A stretch of DNA of 64,000 nt from Azolla caroliniana (taxonomy: Eukaryota > Plantae > Polypodiophyta), in NCBI GenBank assembly GCA_043228905.1, contig JBHGNT010000009.1, forward strand, positions 18,414,001-18,478,000, read 5' to 3'. This document shows positions 1-26,456 of the stretch, piece after piece. Every line of letters starts with the position of its first letter. The first letter of the stretch is position 1. Made by a program: the position numbers and the translations under genes. The notes under the pieces were generated by a model, which worked only from the letters and a program-made list of their open reading frames with translations, made no database searches and was not told the DNA's origin.

Positions 1-66
1 ACGAATGCGCATTATGACTCCGTGAATGATTCTCGGTCGTCGTGCACTAGGGTCACGATTCTAAAC

Positions 67-139
67 CGACCCTACTAGGGGTCGAACCTAGAATCTTTGG
101 TTTCGAAGACCAACGCCTTATCCATTAGGCCATAGGATC
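67..139 (-). tRNA. trnR-UCG: tRNA-Arg(UCG), unit 1
   Basis: Reverse complement GATCCTA TG GCCT AATGGATA AGGC G TTGGT CT TCG AA ACCAA AGATT CTAGG TTCGACC CCTAG TAGGGTC G: full cloverleaf, A and B boxes, no intron, no encoded CCA. Confidence 0.95.
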
Positions 140-915
140 TTCGACCTTTCATCGAAAAGCGAAGGGAATGAAGATCTCACATGTGAACGGATAGGACCTC
201 TTATTTCTCGTCATATTTCTTGATCGTCGTATTTTTCGTAGGATCTCTTGTCTCTTACCTTACCATTATATTACTCGCCACATTACGGAGATGAGCTTAA
301 ATGGGTTTATCGGATAAAGGTATGCGGTGTGACGTATGCAATCCATAGAAAAGCATTCATGACCGTACAAATGACCTTCGAGAAGAGTTTTCGTCTCGAA
401 CTGCCAATCTCTGATGCGCAACGTTACCGTTCTCGTCTCATGATACCAACCGCTAGATTCTTCCACTCGTACGTAAACTTGCATTGTTGAATCTCGAATA
501 CGCTACCTTCTATTAATTCTACCCTAACCAAATGAAGAGTATCGCGCATGCGACGTCTTAGTGGCGGCCTTCGTGTAGGTTGTTTCTAAATCTTAAACGA
601 CGTCATCCTTGTGGACGACTACATTCAAATGCACACCATACAACAACTAGGCGTCATCACATTCTCGCGTCTACTCGCTTGTATTCAAACTAGGAGCACG
701 GCGAGCCTAAGCAAGAAAGGCATTGTTCATATGTTCCCTCGAGCGAGTGCGCATTAAAAATATGTGAACGGCATCGTCGTGATCGATGATTACGTTCAAA
801 TGAGCGACTTTTATCCCTTCCCCAATCCACGCATGTATTGATTGCGCAACGTTACCGAGCACTCTCGTTGTCATCGTCGTATTCCGATTCTCGAGAAGCG
901 GAACCTAATCCTAGT

Positions 916-988
916 CGATCCTACTAGGGATCGAACCTAGAATCTCTGGTTTCGTAGACCAGCGCCTTATCCATTGGGCCATAGGATC
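916..988 (-). tRNA. trnR-ACG: tRNA-Arg(ACG), unit 1
   Basis: Reverse complement GATCCTA TG GCCC AATGGATA AGGC G CTGGT CT ACG AA ACCAG AGATT CTAGG TTCGATC CCTAG TAGGATC G: full cloverleaf, resembles plant cytosolic tRNA-Arg(ACG). Confidence 0.96.
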
Positions 989-1245
989 TTCGGTTTTCCG
1001 TTGGTAATTGTAGTCCCATTGAGGATCGCGATTGACGTGCGGCACACTTTTGACGAGGAATTTGTGCCGGATAAACCATTCCATTTCTTTTACCTGTTAA
1101 ACATCATCATCCTCGTAAATGAATGCAACCATTAAGCCAAAACAGTGGATACAAAGATCACATTTTCTGGACGGTTGAGACGAATGCGCATTATGACTCC
1201 GTGAATGATTCTCGGTCGTCGTGCACTAGGGTCACGATTCTAAAC

Positions 1246-1318
1246 CGACCCTACTAGGGGTCGAACCTAGAATCTTTGGTTTCGAAGACCAACGCCTTAT
1301 CCATTAGGCCATAGGATC
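1246..1318 (-). tRNA. trnR-UCG: tRNA-Arg(UCG), unit 2
   Basis: Same sequence as 67-139. Confidence 0.95.
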
Positions 1319-2094
1319 TTCGACCTTTCATCGAAAAGCGAAGGGAATGAAGATCTCACATGTGAACGGATAGGACCTCTTATTTCTCGTCATATTTCTT
1401 GATCGTCGTATTTTTCGTAGGATCTCTTGTCTCTTACCTTACCATTATATTACTCGCCACATTACGGAGATGAGCTTAAATGGGTTTATCGGATAAAGGT
1501 ATGCGGTGTGACGTATGCAATCCATAGAAAAGCATTCATGACCGTACAAATGACCTTCGAGAAGAGTTTTCGTCTCGAACTGCCAATCTCTGATGCGCAA
1601 CGTTACCGTTCTCGTCTCATGATACCAACCGCTAGATTCTTCCACTCGTACGTAAACTTGCATTGTTGAATCTCGAATACGCTACCTTCTATTAATTCTA
1701 CCCTAACCAAATGAAGAGTATCGCGCATGCGACGTCTTAGTGGCGGCCTTCGTGTAGGTTGTTTCTAAATCTTAAACGACGTCATCCTTGTGGACGACTA
1801 CATTCAAATGCACACCATACAACAACTAGGCGTCATCACATTCTCGCGTCTACTCGCTTGTATTCAAACTAGGAGCACGGCGAGCCTAAGCAAGAAAGGC
1901 ATTGTTCATATGTTCCCTCGAGCGAGTGCGCATTAAAAATATGTGAACGGCATCGTCGTGATCGATGATTACGTTCAAATGAGCGACTTTTATCCCTTCC
2001 CCAATCCACGCATGTATTGATTGCGCAACGTTACCGAGCACTCTCGTTGTCATCGTCGTATTCCGATTCTCGAGAAGCGGAACCTAATCCTAGT

Positions 2095-2167
2095 CGATCC
2101 TACTAGGGATCGAACCTAGAATCTCTGGTTTCGTAGACCAGCGCCTTATCCATTGGGCCATAGGATC
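2095..2167 (-). tRNA. trnR-ACG: tRNA-Arg(ACG), unit 2
   Basis: Same sequence as 916-988. Confidence 0.95.
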
Positions 2168-2424
2168 TTCGGTTTTCCGTTGGTAATTGTAGTCCCATTG
2201 AGGATCGCGATTGACGTGCGGCACACTTTTGACGAGGAATTTGTGCCGGATAAACCATTCCATTTCTTTTACCTGTTAAACATCATCATCCTCGTAAATG
2301 AATGCAACCATTAAGCCAAAACAGTGGATACAAAGATCACATTTTCTGGACGGTTGAGACGAATGCGCATTATGACTCCGTGAATGATTCTCGGTCGTCG
2401 TGCACTAGGGTCACGATTCTAAAC

Positions 2425-2497
2425 CGACCCTACTAGGGGTCGAACCTAGAATCTTTGGTTTCGAAGACCAACGCCTTATCCATTAGGCCATAGGATC
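2425..2497 (-). tRNA. trnR-UCG: tRNA-Arg(UCG), unit 3
   Basis: Same sequence as 67-139. Confidence 0.95.
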
Positions 2498-3273
2498 TTC
2501 GACCTTTCATCGAAAAGCGAAGGGAATGAAGATCTCACATGTGAACGGATAGGACCTCTTATTTCTCGTCATATTTCTTGATCGTCGTATTTTTCGTAGG
2601 ATCTCTTGTCTCTTACCTTACCATTATATTACTCGCCACATTACGGAGATGAGCTTAAATGGGTTTATCGGATAAAGGTATGCGGTGTGACGTATGCAAT
2701 CCATAGAAAAGCATTCATGACCGTACAAATGACCTTCGAGAAGAGTTTTCGTCTCGAACTGCCAATCTCTGATGCGCAACGTTACCGTTCTCGTCTCATG
2801 ATACCAACCGCTAGATTCTTCCACTCGTACGTAAACTTGCATTGTTGAATCTCGAATACGCTACCTTCTATTAATTCTACCCTAACCAAATGAAGAGTAT
2901 CGCGCATGCGACGTCTTAGTGGCGGCCTTCGTGTAGGTTGTTTCTAAATCTTAAACGACGTCATCCTTGTGGACGACTACATTCAAATGCACACCATACA
3001 ACAACTAGGCGTCATCACATTCTCGCGTCTACTCGCTTGTATTCAAACTAGGAGCACGGCGAGCCTAAGCAAGAAAGGCATTGTTCATATGTTCCCTCGA
3101 GCGAGTGCGCATTAAAAATATGTGAACGGCATCGTCGTGATCGATGATTACGTTCAAATGAGCGACTTTTATCCCTTCCCCAATCCACGCATGTATTGAT
3201 TGCGCAACGTTACCGAGCACTCTCGTTGTCATCGTCGTATTCCGATTCTCGAGAAGCGGAACCTAATCCTAAT

Positions 3274-3346
3274 CGATCCTACTAGGGATCGAACCTAGAA
3301 TCTCTGGTTTCGTAGACCAGCGCCTTATCCATTGGGCCATAGGATC
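3274..3346 (-). tRNA. trnR-ACG: tRNA-Arg(ACG), unit 3
   Basis: Same sequence as 916-988. Confidence 0.95.
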
Positions 3347-3603
3347 TTCGGTTTTCCGTTGGTAATTGTAGTCCCATTGAGGATCGCGATTGACGTGCGG
3401 CACACTTTTGACGAGGAATTTGTGCCGGATAAACCATTCCATTTCTTTTACCTGTTAAACATCATCATCCTCGTAAATGAATGCAACCATTAAGCCAAAA
3501 CAGTGGATACAAAGATCACATTTTCTGGACGGTTGAGACGAATGCGCATTATGACTCCGTGAATGATTCTCGGTCGTCGTGCACTAGGGTCACGATTCTA
3601 AAC

Positions 3604-3676
3604 CGACCCTACTAGGGGTCGAACCTAGAATCTTTGGTTTCGAAGACCAACGCCTTATCCATTAGGCCATAGGATC
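3604..3676 (-). tRNA. trnR-UCG: tRNA-Arg(UCG), unit 4
   Basis: Same sequence as 67-139. Confidence 0.95.
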
Positions 3677-4452
3677 TTCGACCTTTCATCGAAAAGCGAA
3701 GGGAATGAAGATCTCACATGTGAACGGATAGGACCTCTTATTTCTCGTCATATTTCTTGATCGTCGTATTTTTCGTAGGATCTCTTGTCTCTTACCTTAC
3801 CATTATATTACTCGCCACATTACGGAGATGAGCTTAAATGGGTTTATCGGATAAAGGTATGCGGTGTGACGTATGCAATCCATAGAAAAGCATTCATGAC
3901 CGTACAAATGACCTTCGAGAAGAGTTTTCGTCTCGAACTGCCAATCTCTGATGCGCAACGTTACCGTTCTCGTCTCATGATACCAACCGCTAGATTCTTC
4001 CACTCGTACGTAAACTTGCATTGTTGAATCTCGAATACGCTACCTTCTATTAATTCTACCCTAACCAAATGAAGAGTATCGCGCATGCGACGTCTTAGTG
4101 GCGGCCTTCGTGTAGGTTGTTTCTAAATCTTAAACGACGTCATCCTTGTGGACGACTACATTCAAATGCACACCATACAACAACTAGGCGTCATCACATT
4201 CTCGCGTCTACTCGCTTGTATTCAAACTAGGAGCACGGCGAGCCTAAGCAAGAAAGGCATTGTTCATATGTTCCCTCGAGCGAGTGCGCATTAAAAATAT
4301 GTGAACGGCATCGTCGTGATCGATGATTACGTTCAAATGAGCGACTTTTATCCCTTCCCCAATCCACGCATGTATTGATTGCGCAACGTTACCGAGCACT
4401 CTCGTTGTCATCGTCGTATTCCGATTCTCGAGAAGCGGAACCTAATCCTAAT

Positions 4453-4525
4453 CGATCCTACTAGGGATCGAACCTAGAATCTCTGGTTTCGTAGACCAGC
4501 GCCTTATCCATTGGGCCATAGGATC
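4453..4525 (-). tRNA. trnR-ACG: tRNA-Arg(ACG), unit 4
   Basis: Same sequence as 916-988. Confidence 0.95.
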
Positions 4526-4782
4526 TTCGGTTTTCCGTTGGTAATTGTAGTCCCATTGAGGATCGCGATTGACGTGCGGCACACTTTTGACGAGGAATTT
4601 GTGCCGGATAAACCATTCCATTTCTTTTACCTGTTAAACATCATCATCCTCGTAAATGAATGCAACCATTAAGCCAAAACAGTGGATACAAAGATCACAT
4701 TTTCTGGACGGTTGAGACGAATGCGCATTATGACTCCGTGAATGATTCTCGGTCGTCGTGCACTAGGGTCACGATTCTAAAC

Positions 4783-4855
4783 CGACCCTACTAGGGGTCG
4801 AACCTAGAATCTTTGGTTTCGAAGACCAACGCCTTATCCATTAGGCCATAGGATC
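4783..4855 (-). tRNA. trnR-UCG: tRNA-Arg(UCG), unit 5
   Basis: Same sequence as 67-139. Confidence 0.95.
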
Positions 4856-5631
4856 TTCGACCTTTCATCGAAAAGCGAAGGGAATGAAGATCTCACATGT
4901 GAACGGATAGGACCTCTTATTTCTCGTCATATTTCTTGATCGTCGTATTTTTCGTAGGATCTCTTGTCTCTTACCTTACCATTATATTACTCGCCACATT
5001 ACGGAGATGAGCTTAAATGGGTTTATCGGATAAAGGTATGCGGTGTGACGTATGCAATCCATAGAAAAGCATTCATGACCGTACAAATGACCTTCGAGAA
5101 GAGTTTTCGTCTCGAACTGCCAATCTCTGATGCGCAACGTTACCGTTCTCGTCTCATGATACCAACCGCTAGATTCTTCCACTCGTACGTAAACTTGCAT
5201 TGTTGAATCTCGAATACGCTACCTTCTATTAATTCTACCCTAACCAAATGAAGAGTATCGCGCATGCGACGTCTTAGTGGCGGCCTTCGTGTAGGTTGTT
5301 TCTAAATCTTAAACGACGTCATCCTTGTGGACGACTACATTCAAATGCACACCATACAACAACTAGGCGTCATCACATTCTCGCGTCTACTCGCTTGTAT
5401 TCAAACTAGGAGCACGGCGAGCCTAAGCAAGAAAGGCATTGTTCATATGTTCCCTCGAGCGAGTGCGCATTAAAAATATGTGAACGGCATCGTCGTGATC
5501 GATGATTACGTTCAAATGAGCGACTTTTATCCCTTCCCCAATCCACGCATGTATTGATTGCGCAACGTTACCGAGCACTCTCGTTGTCATCGTCGTATTC
5601 CGATTCTCGAGAAGCGGAACCTAATCCTAAT

Positions 5632-5704
5632 CGATCCTACTAGGGATCGAACCTAGAATCTCTGGTTTCGTAGACCAGCGCCTTATCCATTGGGCCATAG
5701 GATC
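5632..5704 (-). tRNA. trnR-ACG: tRNA-Arg(ACG), unit 5
   Basis: Same sequence as 916-988. Confidence 0.95.
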
Positions 5705-5961
5705 TTCGGTTTTCCGTTGGTAATTGTAGTCCCATTGAGGATCGCGATTGACGTGCGGCACACTTTTGACGAGGAATTTGTGCCGGATAAACCATTCCAT
5801 TTCTTTTACCTGTTAAACATCATCATCCTCGTAAATGAATGCAACCATTAAGCCAAAACAGTGGATACAAAGATCACATTTTCTGGACGGTTGAGACGAA
5901 TGCGCATTATGACTCCGTGAATGATTCTCGGTCGTCGTGCACTAGGGTCACGATTCTAAAC

Positions 5962-6034
5962 CGACCCTACTAGGGGTCGAACCTAGAATCTTTGGTTTCG
6001 AAGACCAACGCCTTATCCATTAGGCCATAGGATC
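5962..6034 (-). tRNA. trnR-UCG: tRNA-Arg(UCG), unit 6
   Basis: Same sequence as 67-139. Confidence 0.95.
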
Positions 6035-6810
6035 TTCGACCTTTCATCGAAAAGCGAAGGGAATGAAGATCTCACATGTGAACGGATAGGACCTCTTATT
6101 TCTCGTCATATTTCTTGATCGTCGTATTTTTCGTAGGATCTCTTGTCTCTTACCTTACCATTATATTACTCGCCACATTACGGAGATGAGCTTAAATGGG
6201 TTTATCGGATAAAGGTATGCGGTGTGACGTATGCAATCCATAGAAAAGCATTCATGACCGTACAAATGACCTTCGAGAAGAGTTTTCGTCTCGAACTGCC
6301 AATCTCTGATGCGCAACGTTACCGTTCTCGTCTCATGATACCAACCGCTAGATTCTTCCACTCGTACGTAAACTTGCATTGTTGAATCTCGAATACGCTA
6401 CCTTCTATTAATTCTACCCTAACCAAATGAAGAGTATCGCGCATGCGACGTCTTAGTGGCGGCCTTCGTGTAGGTTGTTTCTAAATCTTAAACGACGTCA
6501 TCCTTGTGGACGACTACATTCAAATGCACACCATACAACAACTAGGCGTCATCACATTCTCGCGTCTACTCGCTTGTATTCAAACTAGGAGCACGGCGAG
6601 CCTAAGCAAGAAAGGCATTGTTCATATGTTCCCTCGAGCGAGTGCGCATTAAAAATATGTGAACGGCATCGTCGTGATCGATGATTACGTTCAAATGAGC
6701 GACTTTTATCCCTTCCCCAATCCACGCATGTATTGATTGCGCAACGTTACCGAGCACTCTCGTTGTCATCGTCGTATTCCGATTCTCGAGAAGCGGAACC
6801 TAATCCTAAT

Positions 6811-6883
6811 CGATCCTACTAGGGATCGAACCTAGAATCTCTGGTTTCGTAGACCAGCGCCTTATCCATTGGGCCATAGGATC
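6811..6883 (-). tRNA. trnR-ACG: tRNA-Arg(ACG), unit 6
   Basis: Same sequence as 916-988. Confidence 0.95.
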
Positions 6884-7140
6884 TTCGGTTTTCCGTTGGT
6901 AATTGTAGTCCCATTGAGGATCGCGATTGACGTGCGGCACACTTTTGACGAGGAATTTGTGCCGGATAAACCATTCCATTTCTTTTACCTGTTAAACATC
7001 ATCATCCTCGTAAATGAATGCAACCATTAAGCCAAAACAGTGGATACAAAGATCACATTTTCTGGACGGTTGAGACGAATGCGCATTATGACTCCGTGAA
7101 TGATTCTCGGTCGTCGTGCACTAGGGTCACGATTCTAAAC

Positions 7141-7213
7141 CGACCCTACTAGGGGTCGAACCTAGAATCTTTGGTTTCGAAGACCAACGCCTTATCCATT
7201 AGGCCATAGGATC
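7141..7213 (-). tRNA. trnR-UCG: tRNA-Arg(UCG), unit 7
   Basis: Same sequence as 67-139. Confidence 0.95.
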
Positions 7214-7989
7214 TTCGACCTTTCATCGAAAAGCGAAGGGAATGAAGATCTCACATGTGAACGGATAGGACCTCTTATTTCTCGTCATATTTCTTGATCG
7301 TCGTATTTTTCGTAGGATCTCTTGTCTCTTACCTTACCATTATATTACTCGCCACATTACGGAGATGAGCTTAAATGGGTTTATCGGATAAAGGTATGCG
7401 GTGTGACGTATGCAATCCATAGAAAAGCATTCATGACCGTACAAATGACCTTCGAGAAGAGTTTTCGTCTCGAACTGCCAATCTCTGATGCGCAACGTTA
7501 CCGTTCTCGTCTCATGATACCAACCGCTAGATTCTTCCACTCGTACGTAAACTTGCATTGTTGAATCTCGAATACGCTACCTTCTATTAATTCTACCCTA
7601 ACCAAATGAAGAGTATCGCGCATGCGACGTCTTAGTGGCGGCCTTCGTGTAGGTTGTTTCTAAATCTTAAACGACGTCATCCTTGTGGACGACTACATTC
7701 AAATGCACACCATACAACAACTAGGCGTCATCACATTCTCGCGTCTACTCGCTTGTATTCAAACTAGGAGCACGGCGAGCCTAAGCAAGAAAGGCATTGT
7801 TCATATGTTCCCTCGAGCGAGTGCGCATTAAAAATATGTGAACGGCATCGTCGTGATCGATGATTACGTTCAAATGAGCGACTTTTATCCCTTCCCCAAT
7901 CCACGCATGTATTGATTGCGCAACGTTACCGAGCACTCTCGTTGTCATCGTCGTATTCCGATTCTCGAGAAGCGGAACCTAATCCTAAT

Positions 7990-8062
7990 CGATCCTACTA
8001 GGGATCGAACCTAGAATCTCTGGTTTCGTAGACCAGCGCCTTATCCATTGGGCCATAGGATC
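7990..8062 (-). tRNA. trnR-ACG: tRNA-Arg(ACG), unit 7
   Basis: Same sequence as 916-988. Confidence 0.95.
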
Positions 8063-8319
8063 TTCGGTTTTCCGTTGGTAATTGTAGTCCCATTGAGGAT
8101 CGCGATTGACGTGCGGCACACTTTTGACGAGGAATTTGTGCCGGATAAACCATTCCATTTCTTTTACCTGTTAAACATCATCATCCTCGTAAATGAATGC
8201 AACCATTAAGCCAAAACAGTGGATACAAAGATCACATTTTCTGGACGGTTGAGACGAATGCGCATTATGACTCCGTGAATGATTCTCGGTCGTCGTGCAC
8301 TAGGGTCACGATTCTAAAC

Positions 8320-8392
8320 CGACCCTACTAGGGGTCGAACCTAGAATCTTTGGTTTCGAAGACCAACGCCTTATCCATTAGGCCATAGGATC
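8320..8392 (-). tRNA. trnR-UCG: tRNA-Arg(UCG), unit 8
   Basis: Same sequence as 67-139. Confidence 0.95.
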
Positions 8393-9168
8393 TTCGACCT
8401 TTCATCGAAAAGCGAAGGGAATGAAGATCTCACATGTGAACGGATAGGACCTCTTATTTCTCGTCATATTTCTTGATCGTCGTATTTTTCGTAGGATCTC
8501 TTGTCTCTTACCTTACCATTATATTACTCGCCACATTACGGAGATGAGCTTAAATGGGTTTATCGGATAAAGGTATGCGGTGTGACGTATGCAATCCATA
8601 GAAAAGCATTCATGACCGTACAAATGACCTTCGAGAAGAGTTTTCGTCTCGAACTGCCAATCTCTGATGCGCAACGTTACCGTTCTCGTCTCATGATACC
8701 AACCGCTAGATTCTTCCACTCGTACGTAAACTTGCATTGTTGAATCTCGAATACGCTACCTTCTATTAATTCTACCCTAACCAAATGAAGAGTATCGCGC
8801 ATGCGACGTCTTAGTGGCGGCCTTCGTGTAGGTTGTTTCTAAATCTTAAACGACGTCATCCTTGTGGACGACTACATTCAAATGCACACCATACAACAAC
8901 TAGGCGTCATCACATTCTCGCGTCTACTCGCTTGTATTCAAACTAGGAGCACGGCGAGCCTAAGCAAGAAAGGCATTGTTCATATGTTCCCTCGAGCGAG
9001 TGCGCATTAAAAATATGTGAACGGCATCGTCGTGATCGATGATTACGTTCAAATGAGCGACTTTTATCCCTTCCCCAATCCACGCATGTATTGATTGCGC
9101 AACGTTACCGAGCACTCTCGTTGTCATCGTCGTATTCCGATTCTCGAGAAGCGGAACCTAATCCTAAT

Positions 9169-15466: not shown

Positions 15467-16400
15467 TTCGACCTTTCATCGAAAAGCGAAGGGAATGAAG
15501 ATCTCACATGTGAACGGATAGGACCTCTTATTTCTCGTCATATTTCTTGATCGTCGTATTTTTCGTAGGATCTCTTGTCTCTTACCTGACCATTATATTA
15601 CGCGCCACATTACGGAGATGAGCTTAAATGGGTTTATCGGATAAAGGTATGCGGTGTGACGTATGCAATCCATAGAAAAGCATTGATGACCGTAGAAATG
15701 ACCTTCGAGAAGAGTTTTCGTCTCGAACTGCCAATCTCTGATGCGCAACGTTACCGTTCTCGTCTCATGATACCAACCGCTAGATTCTTCCACTCGTACG
15801 TAAACTTGCATTGTTGAATCTCGAATACGCTACCTTCTATTAATTCTACCCTAACCAAATGAAGAGTATCGCGCATGCGACGTCTTAGTGGCGGCCTTCG
15901 TGTAGGTTGTTTCTAAATTTTAAACGACGTCATCCTTGTGGACGACTACATTCAAATGCACACCATACAACAACTAGGCGTCATCACATTCTCGCGTCTA
16001 CTCGCTTGTATTCAAACTAGGAGCACGGCGAGCCTAAGCAAGAAAGGCATTGTTCATATGTTCCCTCGAGCGAGTGCGCATTAAAAATATGTGAACGGCA
16101 TCGTCGTGATCGATGATTACGTTCAAATGAGCGACTTTTATCCCTTCCCCAATCCACGCATGTATTGATTGCGCAACGTTACCGAGCACTCTCGTTGTCA
16201 TCGTCGTATTCCGATTCTCGAGAAGCGGAACCATTCCATTTCTTTTACCTGTTAAACATCATCATCCTCGTAAATGAATGCAACCATTAAGCCAAAACAG
16301 TGGATACAAAGATCACATTTTCTGGACGGTTGAGACGAATGCGCATTATGACTCCGTGAATGATTCTCGGTCGTCGTGCACTAGGGTCACGATTCTAAAC

Positions 16401-16473
16401 CGACCCTACTAGGGGTCGAACCTAGAATCTTTGGTTTCGAAGACCAACGCCTTATCCATTAGGCCATAGGATC
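16401..16473 (-). tRNA. trnR-UCG: tRNA-Arg(UCG), unit 15
   Basis: Same sequence as 67-139. Confidence 0.95.
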
Positions 16474-17249: not shown

Positions 17250-17322
17250 CGATCCTACTAGGGATCGAACCTAGAATCTCTGGTTTCGTAGACCAGCGCC
17301 TTATCCATTGGGCCATAGGATC
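17250..17322 (-). tRNA. trnR-ACG: tRNA-Arg(ACG), unit 15
   Basis: Same sequence as 916-988. Confidence 0.95.
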
Positions 17323-17579: not shown

Positions 17580-17652
17580 CGACCCTACTAGGGGTCGAAC
17601 CTAGAATCTTTGGTTTCGAAGACCAACGCCTTATCCATTAGGCCATAGGATC
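17580..17652 (-). tRNA. trnR-UCG: tRNA-Arg(UCG), unit 16
   Basis: Same sequence as 67-139. Confidence 0.95.
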
Positions 17653-18428
17653 TTCGACCTTTCATCGAAAAGCGAAGGGAATGAAGATCTCACATGTGAA
17701 CGGATAGGACCTCTTATTTCTCGTCATATTTCTTGATCGTCGTATTTTTCGTAGGATCTCTTGTCTCTTACCTGACCATTATATTACGCGCCACATTACG
17801 GAGATGAGCTTAAATGGGTTTATCGGATAAAGGTATGCGGTGTGACGTATGCAATCCATAGAAAAGCATTGATGACCGTAGAAATGACCTTCGAGAAGAG
17901 TTTTCGTCTCGAACTGCCAATCTCTGATGCGCAACGTTACCGTTCTCGTCTCATGATACCAACCGCTAGATTCTTCCACTCGTACGTAAACTTGCATTGT
18001 TGAATCTCGAATACGCTACCTTCTATTAATTCTACCCTAACCAAATGAAGAGTATCGCGCATGCGACGTCTTAGTGGCGGCCTTCGTGTAGGTTGTTTCT
18101 AAATTTTAAACGACGTCATCCTTGTGGACGACTACATTCAAATGCACACCATACAACAACTAGGCGTCATCACATTCTCGCGTCTACTCGCTTGTATTCA
18201 AACTAGGAGCACGGCGAGCCTAAGCAAGAAAGGCATTGTTCATATGTTCCCTCGAGCGAGTGCGCATTAAAAATATGTGAACGGCATCGTCGTGATCGAT
18301 GATTACGTTCAAACGAGCGACTTTTATCCCTTCCCCAATCCACGCATGTATTGATTGCGCAACGTTACCGAGCACTCTCGTTGTCATCGTCGTATTCCGA
18401 TTCTCGAGAAGCGGAACCTAATCCTAGT

Positions 18429-18501
18429 CGATCCTACTAGGGATCGAACCTAGAATCTCTGGTTTCGTAGACCAGCGCCTTATCCATTGGGCCATAGGAT
18501 C
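18429..18501 (-). tRNA. trnR-ACG: tRNA-Arg(ACG), unit 16
   Basis: Same sequence as 916-988. Confidence 0.95.
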
Positions 18502-18758
18502 TTCGGTTTTCCGTTGGTAATTGTAGTCCCATTGAGGATCGCGATTGACGTGCGGCACACTTTTGACGAGGAATTTGTGCCGGATAAACCATTCCATTTC
18601 TTTTACCTGTTAAACATCATCATCCTCGTAAATGAATGCAACCATTAAGCCAAAACAGTGGATACAAAGATCACATTTTCTGGACGGTTGAGACGAATGC
18701 GCATTATGACTCCGTGAATGATTCTCGGTCGCCGTGCACTAGGGTCACGATTCTAAAC

Positions 18759-18831
18759 CGACCCTACTAGGGGTCGAACCTAGAATCTTTGGTTTCGAAG
18801 ACCAACGCCTTATCCATTAGGCCATAGGATC
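18759..18831 (-). tRNA. trnR-UCG: tRNA-Arg(UCG), unit 17
   Basis: Same sequence as 67-139. Confidence 0.95.
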
Positions 18832-19607
18832 TTCGACCTTTCATCGAAAAGCGAAGGGAATGAAGATCTCACATGTGAACGGATAGGACCTCTTATTTCT
18901 CGTCATATTTCTTGATCGTCGTATTTTTCGTAGGATCTCTTGTCTCTTACCTGACCATTATATTACGCGCCACATTACGGAGATGAGCTTAAATGGGTTT
19001 ATCGGATAAAGGTATGCGGTGTGACGTATGCAATCCATAGAAAAGCATTGATGACCGTAGAAATGACCTTCGAGAAGAGTTTTCGTCTCGAACTGCCAAT
19101 CTCTGATGCGCAACGTTACCGTTCTCGTCTCATGATACCAACCGCTAGATTCTTCCACTCGTACGTAAACTTGCATTGTTGAATCTCGAATACGCTACCT
19201 TCTATTAATTCTACCCTAACCAAATGAAGAGTATCGCGCATGCGACGTCTTAGTGGCGGCCTTCGTGTAGGTTGTTTCTAAATTTTAAACGACGTCATCC
19301 TTGTGGACGACTACATTCAAATGCACACCATACAACAACTAGGCGTCATCACATTCTCGCCTCTACTCGCTTGTATTCAAACTAGGAGCACGGCGAGCCT
19401 AAGCAAGAAAGGCATTGTTCATATGTTCCCTCGAGCGAGTGCGCATTAAAAATATGTGAACGGCATCGTCGTGATCGATGATTACGTTCAAACGAGCGAC
19501 TTTTATCCCTTCCCCAATCCACGCATGTATTGATTGCGCAACGTTACCGAGCACTCTCGTTGTCATCGTCGTATTCCGATTCTCGAGAAGCGGAACCTAA
19601 TCCTAAT

Positions 19608-19680
19608 CGATCCTACTAGGGATCGAACCTAGAATCTCTGGTTTCGTAGACCAGCGCCTTATCCATTGGGCCATAGGATC
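19608..19680 (-). tRNA. trnR-ACG: tRNA-Arg(ACG), unit 17
   Basis: Same sequence as 916-988. Confidence 0.95.
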
Positions 19681-19937
19681 TTCGGTTTTCCGTTGGTAAT
19701 TGTAGTCCCATTGAGGATCGCGATTGACGTGCGGCACACTTTTGACGAGGAATTTGTGCCGGATAAACCATTCCATTTCTTTTACCTGTTAAACATCATC
19801 ATCCTCGTAAATGAATGCAACCATTAAGCCAAAACAGTGGATACAAAGATCACATTTTCTGGACGGTTGAGACGAATGCGCATTATGACTCCGTGAATGA
19901 TTCTCGGTCGTCGTGCACTAGGGTCACGATTCTAAAC

Positions 19938-20010
19938 CGACCCTACTAGGGGTCGAACCTAGAATCTTTGGTTTCGAAGACCAACGCCTTATCCATTAGG
20001 CCATAGGATC
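19938..20010 (-). tRNA. trnR-UCG: tRNA-Arg(UCG), unit 18
   Basis: Same sequence as 67-139. Confidence 0.95.
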
Positions 20011-20708
20011 TTCGACCTTTCATCGAAAAGCGAAGGGAATGAAGATCTCACATGTGAACGGATAGGACCTCTTATTTCTCGTCATATTTCTTGATCGTCG
20101 TATTTTTCGTAGGATCTCTTGTCTCTTACCTGACCATTATATTACGCGCCACATTACGGAGATGAGCTTAAATGGGTTTATCGGATAAAGGTATGCGGTG
20201 TGACGTATGCAATCCATAGAAAAGCATTGATGACCGTAGAAATGACCTTCGAGAAGAGTTTTCGTCTCGAACTGCCAATCTCTGATGCGCAACGTTACCG
20301 TTCTCGTCTCATGATACCAACCGCTAGATTCTTCCACTCGTACGTAAACTTGCATTGTTGAATCTCGAATACGCTACCTTCTATTAATTCTACCCTAACC
20401 AAATGAAGAGTATCGCGCATGCGACGTCTTAGTGGCGGCCTTCGTGTAGGTTGTTTCTAAATTTTAAACGACGTCATCCTTGTGGACGACTACATTCAAA
20501 TGCACACCATACAACAACTAGGCGTCATCACATTCTCGCCTCTACTCGCTTGTATTCAAACTAGGAGCACGGCGAGCCTAAGCAAGAAAGGCATTGTTCA
20601 TATGTTCCCTCGAGCGAGTGCGCATTAAAAATATGTGAACGGCATCGTCGTGATCGATGATTACGTTCAAATGAGCGACTTTTATCCCTTCCCCACCCTA
20701 ATCCTAAT

Positions 20709-20781
20709 CGATCCTACTAGGGATCGAACCTAGAATCTCTGGTTTCGTAGACCAGCGCCTTATCCATTGGGCCATAGGATC
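20709..20781 (-). tRNA. trnR-ACG: tRNA-Arg(ACG), unit 18
   Basis: Same sequence as 916-988; 78-bp deletion in the 3' flank. Confidence 0.95.
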
Positions 20782-21037
20782 TTCGGTTTTCCGTTGGTAA
20801 TTGTAGTCCCATTGAGGATCGCGATTGACGTGCGGCACACTTTTGACGAGGAATTTGTGCCGGGTAAACCATTCCATTTCTTTTACCTATTAAACATCAT
20901 CATCCTCGTAAATGAATGCAACCATTAAGCCAAAACAGTGGATACAAGATCACATTTTCTGGACGGTTGAGACGAATGCGCATTATGACTCCGTGAATGA
21001 TTCTCGGTCGTCGTGCACTAGGGTCACGATTCTAAAC

Positions 21038-21110
21038 CGACCCTACTAGGGGTTGAACCTAGAATCTTTGGTTTCGAAGACCAACGCCTTATCCATTAGG
21101 CCATAGGATC
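21038..21110 (-). tRNA. trnR-UCG: tRNA-Arg(UCG), unit 19 (T-loop TTCAACC variant)
   Basis: As 67-139 with G57>A; still a purine, so canonical. Confidence 0.93.
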
Positions 21111-21886
21111 TTCGACCTTTCATCGAAAAGCGAAGGGAATGAAGATCTCACATGTGAACGGATAGGACCTCTTATTTCTCGTCATATTTCTTGATCGTCG
21201 TATTTTTCGTAGGATCTCTTGTCTCTTACCTCACCATTATATTACTCGCCACATTACGGAGATGAGCTTAAATGGGTTTATCGGATAAAGGTATGCGGTG
21301 TGACGTATGCAATCCATAGAAAAGCATTCATGACCGTACAAATGACCTTCGAGAAGAGTTTTCGTCTCGAACTGCCAATCTCTGATGCGCAACGTTACTG
21401 TTCTCGTCTCATGATACCAACCGCTAGATTCTTCCACTCGTACGTAAACTTGCATTGTTGAATCTCGAATACGCTACCTTCTATTAATTCTACCCTAACC
21501 AAATGAAGAGTATCGCGCATGCGACGTCTTAGTGGCGGCCTTCGTGTAGGTTGTTTCTAAATTTTAAACGACGTCATCCTTGTGGACGACTACATTCAAA
21601 TGCACACCATACAACAACTAGGCGTCATCACATTCTCGCGTCTACTCGCTTGTATTCAAACTAGGAGCACGGCGAGCCTAAGCAAGAAAGGCATTGTTCA
21701 TATGTTCCCTCGAGCGAGTGCGCATTAAAAATATGTGAACGGCATCGTCGTGATCGATGAGTACGTTCAAATGAGCGACTTTTATCCCTTCCCCAATCCA
21801 CGCATGTATTGATTGCGCAACGTTACCGAGCACTCTCGTTGTCATCGTCGTATTCCGATTCTCGAGAAGCGGAACCTAATCCTAAT

Positions 21887-21959
21887 CGATCCTACTAGGG
21901 ATCGAACCTAGAATCTCTGGTTTCGTAGACCAGCGCCTTATCCATTGGGCCATAGGATC
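21887..21959 (-). tRNA. trnR-ACG: tRNA-Arg(ACG), unit 19
   Basis: Same sequence as 916-988. Confidence 0.95.
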
Positions 21960-22215
21960 TTCGGTTTTCCGTTGGTAATTGTAGTCCCATTGAGGATCGC
22001 GATTGACGTGCGGCACACTTTTGACGAGGAATTTGTGCCGGATAAACCATTCCATTTCTTTTACCTATTTAACATCATCATCCTCGTAAATGAATGCAAC
22101 CATTAAGCCAAAACAGTGGATACAAGATCACATTTTCTGGATGGTTGAGACGAATGCGCATTATGACTCCGTGAATGATTCTCGGTCGTCGTGCACTAGG
22201 GTCACGATTCTAAAC

Positions 22216-22288
22216 CGACCCTACTAGGGGTCGAACCTAGAATCTTTGGTTTCGAAGACCAACGCCTTATCCATTAGGCCATAGGATC
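22216..22288 (-). tRNA. trnR-UCG: tRNA-Arg(UCG), unit 20
   Basis: Same sequence as 67-139. Confidence 0.95.
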
Positions 22289-22986
22289 TTCGACCTTTCA
22301 TTGAAAAGCGAAGGGAATGAAGATCTCACATGTGAACGGATAGGACCTCTTATTTCTCGTCATATTTCTTGATCGTCGTATTTTTCGTAGGATCTCTTGT
22401 CTCTTACCTGACCATTATATTACGCGCCACATTACGGAGATGAGCTTAAATGGGTTTATCGGATAAAGGTATGCGGTGTGACGTATGCAATCCATAGAAA
22501 AGCATTGATGACCGTACAAATGACCTTCGAGAAGAGTTTTCGTCTCGAACTGCCAATCTCTGATGCGCAACGTTACCGTTCTCGTCTCATGATACCAACT
22601 GCTAGATTCTTCCACTCGTACGTAAACTTGCATTGTTGAATCTCGAATACGCTACCTTCTATTAATTCTACCCTAACCAAATGAAGAGTATCGCGCATGC
22701 GACGTCTTAGTGCCGGCCTTCGTGTAGGTTGTTTCTAAATTTTAAACGACGTCATCCTTGTGGACGACTACATTCAAATGCACACCATACAACAACTAGG
22801 CGTCATCACATTCTCGCGTCTACTCGCTTGTATTCAAACTAGGAGCACGGCGAGCCTAAGCAAGAAAGGCATTGTTCATATGTTCCCTCGAGCGAGTGCG
22901 CATTAAAAATATGTGAACGGCATCGTCGTGATCGATGATTACGTTCAAATGAGCGACTTTTATCCCTTCCCCACCCTAATCCTAAT

Positions 22987-23059
22987 CGATCCTACTAGGG
23001 ATCGAACCTAGAATCTCTGGTTTCGTAGACCAGCGCCTTATCCATTGGGCCATAGGATC
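22987..23059 (-). tRNA. trnR-ACG: tRNA-Arg(ACG), unit 20
   Basis: Same sequence as 916-988; 78-bp deletion in the 3' flank. Confidence 0.95.
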
Positions 23060-23315
23060 TTCGGTTTTCCGTTGGTAATTGTAGTCCCATTGAGGATCGC
23101 GATTGACGTGCGGCACACTTTTGACGAGGAATTTGTGCCGGATAAACCATTCCATTTCTTTTACCTATTAAACATCATCATCCTCGTAAATGAATGCAAC
23201 CATTAAGCCAAAACAGTGGATACAAGATCACATTTTCTGGACGGTTGAGACGAATGCGCATTATGACTCCGTGAATGATTCTCGGTCGTCGTGCACTAGG
23301 GTCACGATTCTAAAC

Positions 23316-23388
23316 CGACCCTACTAGGGGTTGAACCTAGAATCTTTGGTTTCGAAGACCAACGCCTTATCCATTAGGCCATAGGATC
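23316..23388 (-). tRNA. trnR-UCG: tRNA-Arg(UCG), unit 21 (T-loop TTCAACC variant)
   Basis: Same variant as unit 19. Confidence 0.93.
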
Positions 23389-24164
23389 TTCGACCTTTCA
23401 TCGAAAAGCGAAGGGAATGAAGAGCTCACATGTGAACGGATAGGACCTCTTATTTCTCGTCATATTTCTTGATCGTCGTATTTTTCGTAGGATCTCTTGT
23501 CTCTTACCTCACCATTATATTACTCGCCACATTACGGAGATGAGCTTAAATGGGTTTATCGGATAAAGGTATGCGGTGTGACGTATGCAATCCATAGAAA
23601 AGCATTCATGACCGTACAAATGACCTTCGAGAAGAGTTTTCGTCTCGAACTGCCAATCTCTGATGCGCAACGTTACTGTTCTCGTCTCATGATACCAACC
23701 GCTAGATTCTTCCACTCGTACGTAAACTTGCATTGTTGAATCTCGAATACGCTACCTTCTATTAATTCTACCCTAACCAAATGAAGAGTATCGCGCATGC
23801 GACGTCTTAGTGGCGGCCTTCGTGTAGGTTGTTTCTAAATTTTAAACGACGTCATCCTTGTGGACGACTACATTCAAATGCACACCATACAACAACTAGG
23901 CGTCATCACATTCTCGCGTCTACTCGCTTGTATTCAAACTAGGAGCACGGCGAGCCTAAGCAAGAAAGGCATTGTTCATATGTTCCCTCGAGCGAGTGCG
24001 CATTAAAAATATGTGAACGGCATCGTCGTGATCGATGAGTACGTTCAAATGAGCGACTTTTATCCCTTCCCCAATCCACGCATGTATTGATTGCGCAACG
24101 TTACCAAGCACTCTCGTTGTCATCGTCGTATTCCGATTCTCGAGAAGCGGAACCTAATCCTAAT

Positions 24165-24237
24165 CGATCCTACTAGGGATCGAACCTAGAATCTCTGGTT
24201 TCGTAGACCAGCGCCTTATCCATTGGGCCATAGGATC
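24165..24237 (-). tRNA. trnR-ACG: tRNA-Arg(ACG), unit 21
   Basis: Same sequence as 916-988. Confidence 0.95.
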
Positions 24238-24493
24238 TTCGGTTTTCCGTTGGTAATTGTAGTCCCATTGAGGATCGCGATTGACGTGCGGCACACTTTT
24301 GACGAGGAATTTGTGCCGGATTAACCATTCCATTTCTTTTACCTATTAAACATCATCATCCTCGTAAATGAATGCAACCATTAAGCCAAAACAGTGGATA
24401 CAAGATCACATTTTATGGACGGTTGAGACGAATGCGCATTATGACTCCGTGAATGATTCTCGGTCGTCGTGCACTAGGGTCACGATTCTAAAC

Positions 24494-24566
24494 CGACCCT
24501 ACTAGGGGTCGAACCTAGAATCTTTGGTTTCGAAGACCAACGCCTTATCCATTAGGCCATAGGATC
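24494..24566 (-). tRNA. trnR-UCG: tRNA-Arg(UCG), unit 22
   Basis: Same sequence as 67-139. Confidence 0.95.
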
Positions 24567-25342
24567 TTCGACCTTTCATTGAAAAGCGAAGGGAATGAAG
24601 ATCTCACATGTGAACGGATAGGACCTCTTATTTCTCGTCATATTTCTTGATCGTCGTATTTTTCGTAGGATCTCTTGTCTCTTACCTTACCATTATATTA
24701 CTCGCCACATTACGGAGATGAGCTTAAATGGGTTTATCGGATAAAGGTATGCGGTGTGACGTATGCAATCCATAGAAAAGCATTCATGACCGTACAAATG
24801 ACCTTCGAGAAGAGTTTTCGTCTCGAACTGCCAATCTCTGAGGCGCAACGTTACCGTTCTCATCTCATGATACCAACCGCTAGATTCTTCCACTCGTACG
24901 TAAACTTGCATTGTTGAATCTCGAATACGCTACCTTCTAGTAATTCTACCCTAACCAAATGAAGAGTATCGCGCATGCGACGTCTTAGTGGCGGCCTTCG
25001 TGTAGGTTGTTTCTAAATTTTAAACGACGTCATCCTTGTGGACGACTACATTCAAATGCACACCATACAACAACTAGGCGTCATCACATTCTCGCGTCTA
25101 CTCGCTTGTATTCAAACTAGGAGCACGGCGAGCCTAAGCAAGAAAGGCATTGTTCATATGTTCCCTCGAGCGAGTGCGCATTAAAAATATGTGAACGGCA
25201 TCGTCGTGATCGATGATTACGTTCAAATGAGCGACTTTTATCCCTTCCCCAATCCACGCATGTATTGATTGCGCAACGTTACCGAGCACTCTCGTTGTCA
25301 TCGTCGTATTCCGATTCTCGAGAAGCGGAACCTAATCCTAAT

Positions 25343-25415
25343 CGATCCTACTAGGGATCGAACCTAGAATCTCTGGTTTCGTAGACCAGCGCCTTATCCA
25401 TTGGGCCATAGGATC
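25343..25415 (-). tRNA. trnR-ACG: tRNA-Arg(ACG), unit 22
   Basis: Same sequence as 916-988. Confidence 0.95.
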
Positions 25416-25671
25416 TTCGGTTTTCCGTTGGTAATTGTAGTCCCATTGAGGATCGCGATTGACGTGCGGCACACTTTTGACGAGGAATTTGTGCCGGATA
25501 AACCATTCCATTTCTTTTACCTATTAAACATCATCATCCTCGTAAATGAATGCAACCATTAAGCCAAAACAGTGGATACAAGATCACATTTTCTGGATGG
25601 TTGAGACGAATGCGCATTATGACTCCGTGAATGATTCTCGGTCGTCGTGCACTAGGGTCACGATTCTAAAC

Positions 25672-25744
25672 CGACCCTACTAGGGGTCGAACCTAGAATC
25701 TTTGGTTTCGAAGACCAACGCCTTATCCATTAGGCCATAGGATC
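25672..25744 (-). tRNA. trnR-UCG: tRNA-Arg(UCG), unit 23
   Basis: Same sequence as 67-139. Confidence 0.95.
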
Positions 25745-26456
25745 TTCGACCTTTCATTGAAAAGCGAAGGGAATGAAGATCTCACATGTGAACGGATAGG
25801 ACCTCTTATTTCTCGTCATATTTCTTGATCGTCGTATTTTTCGTAGGATCTCTTGTCTCTTACCTGACCATTATATTACGCGCCACATTACGGAGATTAG
25901 CTTAAATGGGTTTATCGGATAAAGGTATGCGGTGTGACGTATGCAATCCATAGAAAAGCATTGATGACCGTACAAATGACCTTCGAGAAGAGTTTTCGTC
26001 TCGAACTGCCAATCTCTGATGCGCAACGTTACCGTTCTCGTCTCATGATACCAACCGCTAGATTCTTCCACTCGTACGTAAACTTGCATTGTTGAATCTC
26101 GAATACGCTACCTTCTATTAATTCTACCCTAACCAAATGAAGAGTATCGCGCATGCGACGTCTTAGTGGCGGCCTTCGTGTAGGTTGTTTCTAAATTTTA
26201 AACGACGTCATCCTTGTGGACGACTACATTCAAATGCACACCATACAACAACTAGGCGTCATCACATTCTCGCCTCTACTCGCTTGTATTCAAACTAGGA
26301 GCACGGCGAGCCTAAGCAAGAAAGGCATTGTTCATATGTTCCCTCGAGCGAGTGCGCATTAAAAATATGTGAACGGCATCGTCGTGATCGATGATTACGT
26401 TCAAATGAGCGACTTTTATCCCTTCCCCAATCCACGCATGTATTGATTGCGCAACG

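What the first reader, a model, noticed from the sequence alone, without database searches (positions are those of the whole stretch)
1..26456. Satellite-like tandem array of paired tRNA-Arg genes (UCG + ACG), at least 44 intact tRNA genes in 26 kb
Seen: what looks like a 1,179-bp satellite is a tDNA array. Each unit holds one tRNA-Arg(UCG) and one tRNA-Arg(ACG), co-oriented on the minus strand, with intact cloverleaves and A/B boxes, and units 1-12 are almost identical. Known: tandem tRNA arrays exist (Arabidopsis Ser-Tyr-Tyr and Pro clusters, Entamoeba tRNA-STR arrays), and ICG plus modified UCG anticodons together decode the whole CGN box. I do not recall an Arg-ACG/Arg-UCG array of this kind being described. 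Inference: either an rDNA-like amplified 1:1 isoacceptor cassette, or a tDNA-based structural satellite (centromeric, heterochromatin boundary or TFIIIC insulator).
Basis: partly seen in the sequence, partly recalled or inferred. Interest (0 to 1): 0.9.

Follow-up and report, generated by a model that had tools for sequence, protein, structure and literature searches.

The report
Tandem array of arginine tRNA genes
A plant (by earlier notes, fern) chromosome segment repeats a 1.18-kb cassette holding two arginine tRNA genes at least 22 times. It is one more of the tRNA gene clusters known in plants, but here the genes have been kept intact while the spacers drifted one-sidedly towards G and C.

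Summary
Window 1-26456 is a head-to-tail array of a 1,179-bp unit on the minus strand. It holds 23 tRNA-Arg(UCG) and 21 tRNA-Arg(ACG) genes, all with full cloverleaves and A/B boxes, and units are 98.4-100% identical.

The array runs on to 36.15 kb as an older, decayed part (81-87% identity), behind a retrotransposon fragment.

A metagenome scan found the same UCG+ACG cassette in tandem on six contigs. Their spacers are only 66-77% identical to the window's, yet the ACG gene is 73/73 and the UCG gene 72/73 identical.

With these contigs as outgroup, the line leading to the homogeneous array fixed 38 substitutions. Thirty-six are AT>GC and none GC>AT, and only one lies in a tRNA gene.

I read it as a 5S-rDNA-like gene array. 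It evolves in concert, its tRNA genes are under purifying selection, and homogenisation is strongly GC-biased. Nothing supports a structural or centromeric role.

No T4 terminator lies within 100 nt of either gene, and this holds in the outgroup too.

The kind is known: plant tDNA clusters include two-gene units repeated up to 37 times. The scan noted a similar array on another piece of this genome (s1-504173).

The parts
1..26456 (-). Homogeneous ('young') tandem array: 22 full units plus partial units at both ends, with 23 tRNA-Arg(UCG) and 21 tRNA-Arg(ACG) genes. It is cut by the window start.
140..1318 (-). Reference 1,179-bp unit. On the sense strand: tRNA-Arg(UCG) at 1-73, spacer 1 at 74-330, tRNA-Arg(ACG) at 331-403, spacer 2 at 404-1179. 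CpG observed/expected is 1.45 and GC is 44.7%.
1246..1318 (-). tRNA-Arg(UCG) gene (example copy). It carries a U3.G70 wobble that is derived; the outgroup and the old copies have A70.
916..988 (-). tRNA-Arg(ACG) gene (example copy), 73/73 identical to the copies on L001, L002, L004 and L006.
1139..1142 (-). First run of at least four T after the UCG gene, 104 nt downstream. A T run sits at a similar place in the old copies and in the outgroup arrays.
756..760 (-). First run of at least four T (T5) after the ACG gene, 156 nt downstream. It is kept at the homologous place in L005 but not in L001/L003.
15467..16473 (-). Unit 14, 1,007 bp. A 172-bp deletion removed the ACG gene.
20011..21110 (-). 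Unit 18, 1,100 bp, with a 78-bp spacer deletion shared with unit 20 (22289-23388). Together with the alternating variant pattern over units 13-21, this shows exchange in a two-unit register.
26457..31557 (+). Ty3-type retrotransposon fragment (RT, RNase H, integrase) between the young and old parts. No LTR pair was found. The unit phase jumps from 712 to about 558 across it, so it is not a clean insertion.
31558..36150 (-). Old, decayed part of the same array: 4-5 units at 81-87% identity to the young unit, with eight tRNA relics of both types (Rfam 35-53 bits or none). GC is 36.8% and CpG observed/expected 0.95.

Best explanation
This is a Pol III gene array of the 5S-rDNA type. A 1.18-kb cassette carries one tRNA-Arg(UCG) gene and one tRNA-Arg(ACG) gene. 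The two are closely related isoacceptors, 67/73 identical. After A34-to-I editing and U34 modification they could together read all CGN codons; that rests on established wobble rules and was not tested here.

Shown: the cassette is multiplied and kept uniform by unequal exchange or gene conversion. The core is uniform, the right-hand units alternate in a two-unit pattern, and the edge copies have escaped homogenisation and decay.

Shown: the tRNA genes have been under purifying selection, both along the line leading to the present array and across three diverged array families. The spacers are free to change.

Shown: in the homogenised line almost every fixed change is AT>GC, and half of these create a CpG. 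I infer GC-biased gene conversion, as proposed for rDNA.

Inferred: the genes are, or recently were, transcribed by Pol III from their internal A/B boxes. Transcription would end only at T runs 100-160 nt downstream, giving long 3' trailers that RNase Z must remove. Whether the array is active everywhere, only in some cell types like the Arabidopsis Ser-Tyr-Tyr cluster, or now silent, is not known.
For: All 44 genes are intact, with high Rfam scores, and the cloverleaf is the minimum-energy fold for UCG.

Units are 98.4-100% identical. Variants are structured, with types a and b alternating over units 13-21 and a shared 78-bp deletion in units 18 and 20.

The same cassette stands in tandem on six independently assembled contigs. 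There the spacers are 66-77% identical to the window's, but the tRNA genes are 99% identical on L001-L004 and L006.

An ML tree puts all window copies in one clade (support 98/97), with L005 and L001/L003 outside it. The young branch, at 0.063, is as long as the old-copy branches (0.049-0.088).

On the young branch there are 38 substitutions over 743 polarisable sites: 36 AT>GC, 0 GC>AT, and 18 that create a CpG. Under the spectrum of the old copies the probability is 1.7e-16. Only 1 of 142 tRNA sites changed against 37 of 601 spacer sites (Fisher p=0.005).

The ACG and UCG genes differ by a compensated 27:43 pair, C-G against U-A.

A T run lies at a similar distance after the UCG gene in all array families.

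GC-biased gene conversion in rDNA arrays is cited in PMC6562748.
Against: No T4 lies within 25 nt of either gene. The longest T runs there are 3 and 2, against a median of 5-6 in Arabidopsis tDNAs (PMC7544208).

The upstream 50 nt are only 54-56% AT, and no CAA triplet lies at -10 to -3.

The setting is rich in retrotransposons.

The adjacent old copies decay with a cytosine-deamination signature, so arrays of this kind are not protected once homogenisation stops.

Conservation of the tRNA genes could instead come from repeated conversion by dispersed working genes elsewhere in the genome.

The two changes seen in the young array's tRNA genes (A70>G fixed in UCG, A42>G in three ACG copies) both weaken a Watson-Crick pair to G.U.
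Confidence: 0.6

Rival explanations
1. It is a surplus, epigenetically silenced tDNA cluster, in effect a satellite that happens to be built of tRNA genes. On this reading the genes look intact only because the array is young and homogenised, as in the largely silent Arabidopsis Pro and Ser-Tyr-Tyr clusters.
For: The Arabidopsis clusters are methylated and silent under standard conditions (PMC7544208). There are retrotransposons on the right flank, one with a chromodomain integrase. The old flank shows GC>AT decay: 331 against 52, with CpG sites 30.7% changed and A/T sites 4.6%. There is no nearby terminator and the upstream signals are weak. Earlier notes describe several mostly decayed tRNA arrays in this genome (not checked here).
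Against: The line to the young array is as long as the old-copy branches (0.063), yet it fixed only 1 change in 142 tRNA sites against 37 in 601 spacer sites. The tRNA genes are 99% identical across array families whose spacers differ by 23-34%. Youth alone cannot explain that. Silence in most tissues remains compatible with the best explanation.
Confidence: 0.28
2. It is a structural tDNA satellite. The array would serve as a centromere component, a heterochromatin boundary or a TFIIIC-bound insulator rather than as a tRNA source.
For: The many A/B boxes are potential TFIIIC sites. tDNA clusters flank fission-yeast centromeres (PMC6538654, title and abstract only). The array is satellite-like in uniformity.
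Against: The whole 73-nt genes are conserved, anticodon and acceptor stems included, not only the A/B boxes. The assembled size is modest (at least 26 kb). No spacer block is conserved at the level of the tRNA genes. Nothing in the window marks a centromere.
Confidence: 0.05
3. It is an assembly artefact: one or a few units inflated into an array.
For: Units 3-7 and 10 are identical. The array touches the window start. No read evidence was available.
Against: There is ordered variation along the array: 35 variant sites, three deletion types and two-unit patterns. There is a natural decayed continuation. Tandem copies of the same cassette appear in independent assemblies. A second array was noted on another piece of the genome (unchecked).
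Confidence: 0.02

Closest known systems
Arabidopsis thaliana Ser-Tyr-Tyr tDNA cluster (27 tandem units on chromosome 1) and Pro clusters
   Same: Both are head-to-tail repeats of a cassette with more than one co-oriented tRNA gene, with intact internal promoters. Flanks are more uniform within the cluster than among dispersed genes. Both lie near repeats (PMC7544208, PMC13437025).
   Different: Here the two genes are isoacceptors for one amino acid (Arg) and near-copies of each other. There is no T run of 4 or more within 25 nt, whereas Arabidopsis clustered genes have a median of five. The host is a non-seed plant. Silencing is shown in Arabidopsis and untested here. Conservation across diverged array families and the GC-biased substitution pattern are shown here.
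Moss (Ceratodon purpureus) tandem units of two or three tRNA genes repeated up to 37 times
   Same: Both are multi-gene tRNA cassettes repeated tens of times with identical gene copies in a non-seed land plant (PMC12652284).
   Different: The moss units shown combine different amino acids (Ala+Leu; Val+Glu+Phe). An Arg(UCG)+Arg(ACG) unit is not among those described in the text I read.
5S and 45S rDNA arrays (concerted evolution, conserved gene, diverging spacer, GC-biased gene conversion)
   Same: The evolutionary behaviour is the same: a uniform core, decaying edge copies, a conserved gene against a diverging spacer, and an AT>GC fixation bias (PMC6562748 citing Escobar et al. 2011).
   Different: The product is tRNA, not rRNA. 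The assembled copy number is tens, not hundreds or thousands. Pol III transcription is not shown here.
Isoacceptor anticodon shifts in eukaryotic tRNA genes
   Same: The two genes differ at anticodon position 34 and at only five other positions. First-base isoacceptor shifts are the commonest kind reported (PMC3923123).
   Different: The direction of the shift is not resolved. Both gene types already exist in all three array families, so the shift predates them.
Entamoeba tRNA arrays with short tandem repeats
   Same: Both are tandem arrays whose units carry tRNA genes (mentioned in PMC2888827).
   Different: No short tandem repeats were found in the spacers here. The host lineage is different. 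A structural role has been proposed there.

Membership tests
Plant nuclear tDNA tandem cluster (as defined in PMC13437025: at least 5 tDNAs within 5 kb, tandemly repeated) | At least five tRNA genes within 5 kb | tested here: met
   There are 8-9 genes per 5 kb over 26 kb.
Plant nuclear tDNA tandem cluster (as defined in PMC13437025: at least 5 tDNAs within 5 kb, tandemly repeated) | Head-to-tail repetition of one unit with genes co-oriented | tested here: met
   The period is 1,179 bp, all genes are on the minus strand, and units are 98.4-100% identical.
Plant nuclear tDNA tandem cluster (as defined in PMC13437025: at least 5 tDNAs within 5 kb, tandemly repeated) | Genes with intact cloverleaf and internal A and B boxes | tested here: met
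   Rfam scores are 59-66 bits, there are 21 stem pairs, and the A box (TGGCCYAATGG) and B box (GGTTCGAYCCC) are intact.
Plant nuclear tDNA tandem cluster (as defined in PMC13437025: at least 5 tDNAs within 5 kb, tandemly repeated) | Usual flanking signals: AT-rich or CAA upstream, and poly(T) within about 25 nt downstream (typical, not strictly defining) | tested here: not met
   The longest T runs within +25 are 3 (UCG) and 2 (ACG). The first T4+ is at +104 and +156. The upstream 50 nt are 54-56% AT, and the nearest CAA is at -15. The reviews say non-flowering plants have weaker signals (PMC13578239).
Plant nuclear tDNA tandem cluster (as defined in PMC13437025: at least 5 tDNAs within 5 kb, tandemly repeated) | Epigenetic silencing by DNA methylation (shown for the Arabidopsis clusters) | not testable with these tools
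There are only indirect hints: the old flank has a deamination signature, and the young unit has CpG observed/expected of 1.45.
Concertedly evolving Pol III gene array (5S-rDNA type) | High identity within the array, with a conserved gene and a diverged spacer between arrays or lineages | tested here: met
   Identity within the array is at least 98.4%. Between array families the spacer is 66-77% identical and the tRNA genes 99%.
Concertedly evolving Pol III gene array (5S-rDNA type) | Transcription of the arrayed genes by Pol III | not testable with these tools
   No RNA or ChIP data could be reached.
Centromeric or structural satellite | CENH3 or boundary-protein occupancy and a special chromosomal position | not testable with these tools
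   No data. The sequence shows only that whole genes, not just the TFIIIC boxes, are conserved.
tRNA-derived SINE | Dispersed copies with a tRNA-related head, a body, an A-rich or simple-repeat tail and target-site duplications | tested here: not met
   Copies are strictly tandem, with no tails, and the unit matches nothing else in the window beyond 36112.
Dicistronic tRNA-snoRNA gene (plants) | A conserved C/D-box snoRNA between the tRNA and the terminator | tested here: not met
   There is no Rfam hit at E up to 1. The AUGAUGA motif in spacer 1 lies after the T4 and is not kept in L001/L003. No conserved structure was found in the trailer.

The most novel reading that the evidence does not exclude
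These arrays are the main, perhaps the only, genomic source of the CGN-decoding arginine tRNAs in this fern lineage. That would make them a 5S-rDNA-like tRNA gene locus, with conserved distal terminators that yield 100-160-nt 3' trailers. Their homogenisation would be so GC-biased that it remodels the spacers into CpG-rich DNA and has driven a pair-weakening A70>G change through every UCG copy.
Probability: 0.3. Interest if true: 0.6.

Novelty: new member of a known kind. Interest (0 to 1): 0.42.

Why it matters
Recent surveys state that land-plant tRNA genes are mostly dispersed, that clusters are exceptions involving few isotypes (Pro, Ser/Tyr, Gln, Ala, Ile), and that clustered copies are extra and silent. 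Ferns are barely sampled in those surveys.

This locus adds an arginine cassette. More usefully, it gives sequence evidence that arrayed copies can be under long-term purifying selection, because they are conserved across array families whose spacers differ by a quarter to a third.

It also offers a clean natural example of GC-biased concerted evolution outside rDNA: 36 AT>GC changes against 0 GC>AT.

The G70 base gives an array-specific marker. With it, tRNA sequencing can directly ask whether a plant tDNA array is expressed.

Tried and rejected

2. Another gene in the spacer. No other Rfam family matches at E up to 1 apart from a spurious sub-threshold Plastid-ycf2 match on the opposite strand of the ACG gene. 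The only ORFs are short, up to 80 aa, and repeat with the unit.

3. A tRNA-snoRNA dicistron. A C-box-like AUGAUGA in spacer 1 is not conserved in L001/L003 and lies beyond the T4. RNAalifold finds no consensus structure in the UCG trailer.

4. The unit as a multimer of shorter subrepeats. Only weak internal similarities of 67-76% over 25-45 nt appear apart from the two tRNA genes.

5. My first reading of the young/old asymmetry. I took it as deamination on a common stem of the old copies, with a slowly evolving young line. The outgroup rejected this: there are no old-stem changes, the A/T state is ancestral at 29 of 32 such sites, and branch lengths are equal.

6. Literature search for the tRNA sequences as strings: no paper.

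7. Searches for a described fern Arg array: none found.

8. The search of earlier findings by sequence: blank.


Full report
**1. Observation**

ARAGORN finds 44 tRNA genes on the minus strand between 67 and 25744. There are 23 tRNA-Arg(UCG) and 21 tRNA-Arg(ACG). Rfam's tRNA model scores them at 66.3-66.4 and 62.7 bits (three ACG copies at 59.4), against a gathering score of 29.

There are two UCG sequence variants (21+2 copies) and two ACG variants (18+3 copies). All keep the 21 stem pairs of the cloverleaf. UCG has only standard pairs, with U3.G70 as a wobble. ACG has the common C13.A22 at the end of the D stem. The cloverleaf is the minimum-energy fold of the UCG sequence. The A box (TGGCCYAATGG) and B box (GGTTCGAYCCC) are perfect, and the anticodon loops read CUUCGAA and CUACGAA.

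The period is 1,179 bp. Units are 98.4-100% identical, and units 1-12 are at least 99.7% identical.

There are three exceptions. Unit 14 lost the ACG gene through a 172-bp deletion. Units 18 and 20 share a 78-bp spacer deletion. Units 18-22 lack one base.

The array is cut by the window start, so its length is a lower bound.

**2. Anatomy of the unit and the locus**

On the sense (minus) strand the unit reads as follows:
- tRNA-Arg(UCG), positions 1-73
- spacer 1, positions 74-330
- tRNA-Arg(ACG), positions 331-403
- spacer 2, positions 404-1179

The two genes are 67/73 identical, and one of their differences is a compensated pair (C27-G43 against U27-A43). Their flanks share only the four bases CGAA just upstream.

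The spacers hold no other Rfam family and no meaningful ORF.

Neither gene has a run of four or more T within 25 nt. The first lies 104 nt after UCG and 156 nt after ACG. In Arabidopsis the median longest T run in that space is five for clustered tDNAs and six for dispersed ones (PMC7544208).

The upstream 50 nt are only 54-56% AT.

The unit is unusually CpG-rich. CpG observed/expected is 1.45 for the unit and 1.39-1.61 in the spacers, against 0.64-1.08 in the rest of the window.

The uniform array ends at 26456, at plus-strand unit position 712. A 5.1-kb Ty3-type fragment (RT, RNase H, integrase) without LTRs follows.

From 31558 to 36150 the same array continues as 4-5 decayed units, 81-87% identical to the young unit. 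They carry eight relics of both gene types.

Further right lie LTR elements, a chromodomain-bearing Ty3 element and a Copia fragment.

**3. How the copies have changed**

Against the young consensus, the old copies differ at 466 aligned sites. GC>AT changes number 331 and AT>GC changes 52. CpG sites are 30.7% changed, other C/G sites 17.9% and A/T sites 4.6%. This is the pattern expected from deamination of methylated cytosine in a plant repeat.

The tRNA parts of the old copies are only slightly better kept than the spacers (8.3% against 12.7% changed). The edge copies are therefore pseudogenes.

At sites where all old copies differ from the young consensus, the young base is G or C in 30 of 32 cases. 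From the window alone the direction could not be settled.

**4. Related arrays elsewhere**

One scan of public metagenome contigs with a 39-nt stretch of the ACG gene returned six contigs, L001-L006, from ENA assemblies ERZ10344xx.

All six carry the same genes in the same order and orientation, in tandem wherever the contig is long enough. L002 and L004 are array edges followed by 8-9 kb of AT-rich DNA, which on L002 holds a Copia RT fragment. This is plant-like host DNA.

None of the six carries the window's own spacer version, so they probably come from a different species. That is an inference.

The whole unit can be aligned and falls into three families:
- the window type
- the L005 type, with spacers 77% identical to the window's
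- the L001/L003 type, with spacers 69% identical to the window's

The ACG gene is nevertheless 73/73 identical on L001, L002, L004 and L006. The UCG gene is 72/73 identical on L001-L004. Over the alignment the spacers average 73.8% identity, ACG 99% and UCG 92%. UCG is decayed on L005.

No spacer block reaches the conservation of the tRNA genes.

The absence of a nearby terminator is shared. The first T4+ lies 93-120 nt after UCG. After ACG it lies 135-165 nt downstream in most copies; one L005 copy has it at +19, and one L001 copy has none within 200 nt. After UCG, a T run lies at a similar distance in every array family; it sits at the homologous position in the window and L005 types, but within an inserted segment in L001/L003.

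**5. Polarised history**

An ML tree places all window copies, young and old, in one clade (support 98/97), with L005 and L001/L003 outside it. Within that clade the tree is a star. The young consensus branch is 0.063 long and the old copies are 0.049-0.088. The young line has therefore changed as much as each old copy.

With the outside arrays as outgroup, 743 sites can be polarised:
- **Young line:** 38 substitutions. Thirty-six are AT>GC (20 T>C, 14 A>G, 2 transversions), none is GC>AT, and 18 create a CpG.
- **Old copies, shared stem:** no changes.
- **Old copies, private changes:** 61 GC>AT, 35 AT>GC and 41 other.

Under the old-copy spectrum, 36 out of 36 has probability 1.7e-16.

Parallel decay cannot explain this. 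There is not one site where the old copies all changed while the outgroup kept the young base.

Variants still segregating among the young units lean the same way: 19 AT>GC against 4 GC>AT, with 4 more unpolarised.

Only 1 of the 38 fixed changes lies in the 142 tRNA sites, against 37 in 601 spacer sites (Fisher p=0.005). That one change is A70>G in UCG. It turns U3-A70 into a wobble pair and lowers the Rfam score from 69.4 to 66.4 bits.

**6. Interpretation**

Shown:
- The array evolves in concert. Its core is uniform, two-unit patterns point to unequal exchange, and its edge has escaped homogenisation and decays.
- The tRNA genes were under purifying selection along a branch about 6% long, and across array families whose spacers differ by 23-34%.
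- Fixation in the homogenised line is almost purely AT>GC.

Inferred:
- The bias comes from GC-biased gene conversion, as proposed for rDNA (PMC6562748). Its strength at TG/CA sites may reflect repair of T:G mismatches towards C:G.
- The selection implies that arrayed copies are, or recently were, expressed.
- Transcripts end at the distal T runs.

The alternative that dispersed working genes keep converting the arrayed genes cannot be excluded without the whole genome.

A silent, surplus cluster, as in Arabidopsis under standard conditions, fits the repeat-rich setting and the weak flanking signals. It does not fit the depletion of substitutions in the genes. Silence in most tissues with use in some, as for the Ser-Tyr-Tyr cluster (PMC13437025), would fit both.

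A structural role has no support. Whole genes are conserved, not just the TFIIIC boxes.

**7. Comparison with what is known**

Plant tDNA clusters are well described:
- the Arabidopsis Ser-Tyr-Tyr and Pro clusters
- maize Ala and Ile clusters
- barley Gln clusters
- moss cassettes of two or three genes repeated up to 37 times
- 220 tandem pairs of isoacceptors for one amino acid

These are covered in PMC7544208, PMC13437025, PMC13578239 and PMC12652284.

First-base isoacceptor shifts are the commonest kind of anticodon shift in eukaryotes (PMC3923123).

I found no description of an Arg(UCG)+Arg(ACG) array or of fern tDNA arrays. Earlier notes of this scan report Asp, Trp, Lys, Val and Tyr arrays, and a second paired-Arg array, in the same genome. 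I did not check those notes. They are also my only source for calling the organism a fern.

The finding is therefore a new member of a known kind. Two aspects are not part of the published picture: evidence of selection on arrayed copies, and an extreme GC-biased substitution pattern.

**8. Limits**

The organism behind L001-L006 is not identified.

Any ages implied by the branch lengths would rest on an assumed mutation rate, so I do not give them.

Noticed in passing
window 26457-31557: A Ty3-type fragment (RT, RNase H, weak integrase match) without LTRs separates the young and old parts of the array. The unit phase jumps from 712 to about 558 across it, so this is a rearranged junction rather than a simple insertion.
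   Followed up: partly
window 36415-36822 and 41307-41716; inverted copies at 44270-44926: A direct repeat pair, 92-97% identical and 4.9 kb apart, looks like the LTRs of a small element next to the old array. Copies of the same sequence lie inverted at the start of the chromodomain Ty3 element.
   Followed up: no
window 44687-49447 (+) and 62159-62908 (-): There is a Ty3 element with gag, RT and an integrase carrying SH3 and chromodomain, and a Copia RT fragment. A canonical chromodomain is usually linked with insertion into heterochromatin (from general knowledge, not tested).
   Followed up: no
window 1179-1210 (-), repeated in every unit: A block of about 30 nt in the UCG trailer, containing the palindrome ATGCGCAT, is much better conserved across the old copies and all outgroup arrays than its surroundings. 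No structure or known motif was found for it.
   Followed up: partly
L005:318-2793: In this related array the UCG copies are decayed (8 or more differences, 31-44 bits), while the ACG copies have one difference each. The two genes of the cassette can therefore be retained unequally.
   Followed up: partly
window 1-25744, variant sites of the young array: Among segregating AT>GC variants, changes from A (14) outnumber changes from T (5) on the tRNA sense strand, including eight A>C transversions. The numbers are too small for significance. The cause could be a strand-asymmetric mutation process or assembly error.
   Followed up: no
window 1201-1212 (-) against old copies and L001-L005: The young unit lacks 10-13 nt of the UCG trailer that most old copies and all outgroup arrays have. 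This deletion was fixed through the whole young array.
   Followed up: no
window 31798-31870 and 34376-34465: ARAGORN calls these tRNA-Cys(ACA) and tRNA-His(AUG). They are decayed copies of the Arg(ACG) gene with G>A or C>T changes in the anticodon, not genes for other amino acids.
   Followed up: yes
L001:141-560 and L003:614-1040: In the L001/L003 array family the UCG-to-ACG distance is about 500 nt instead of 330. The inserted segment includes a second copy of the region just upstream of the ACG gene.
   Followed up: no
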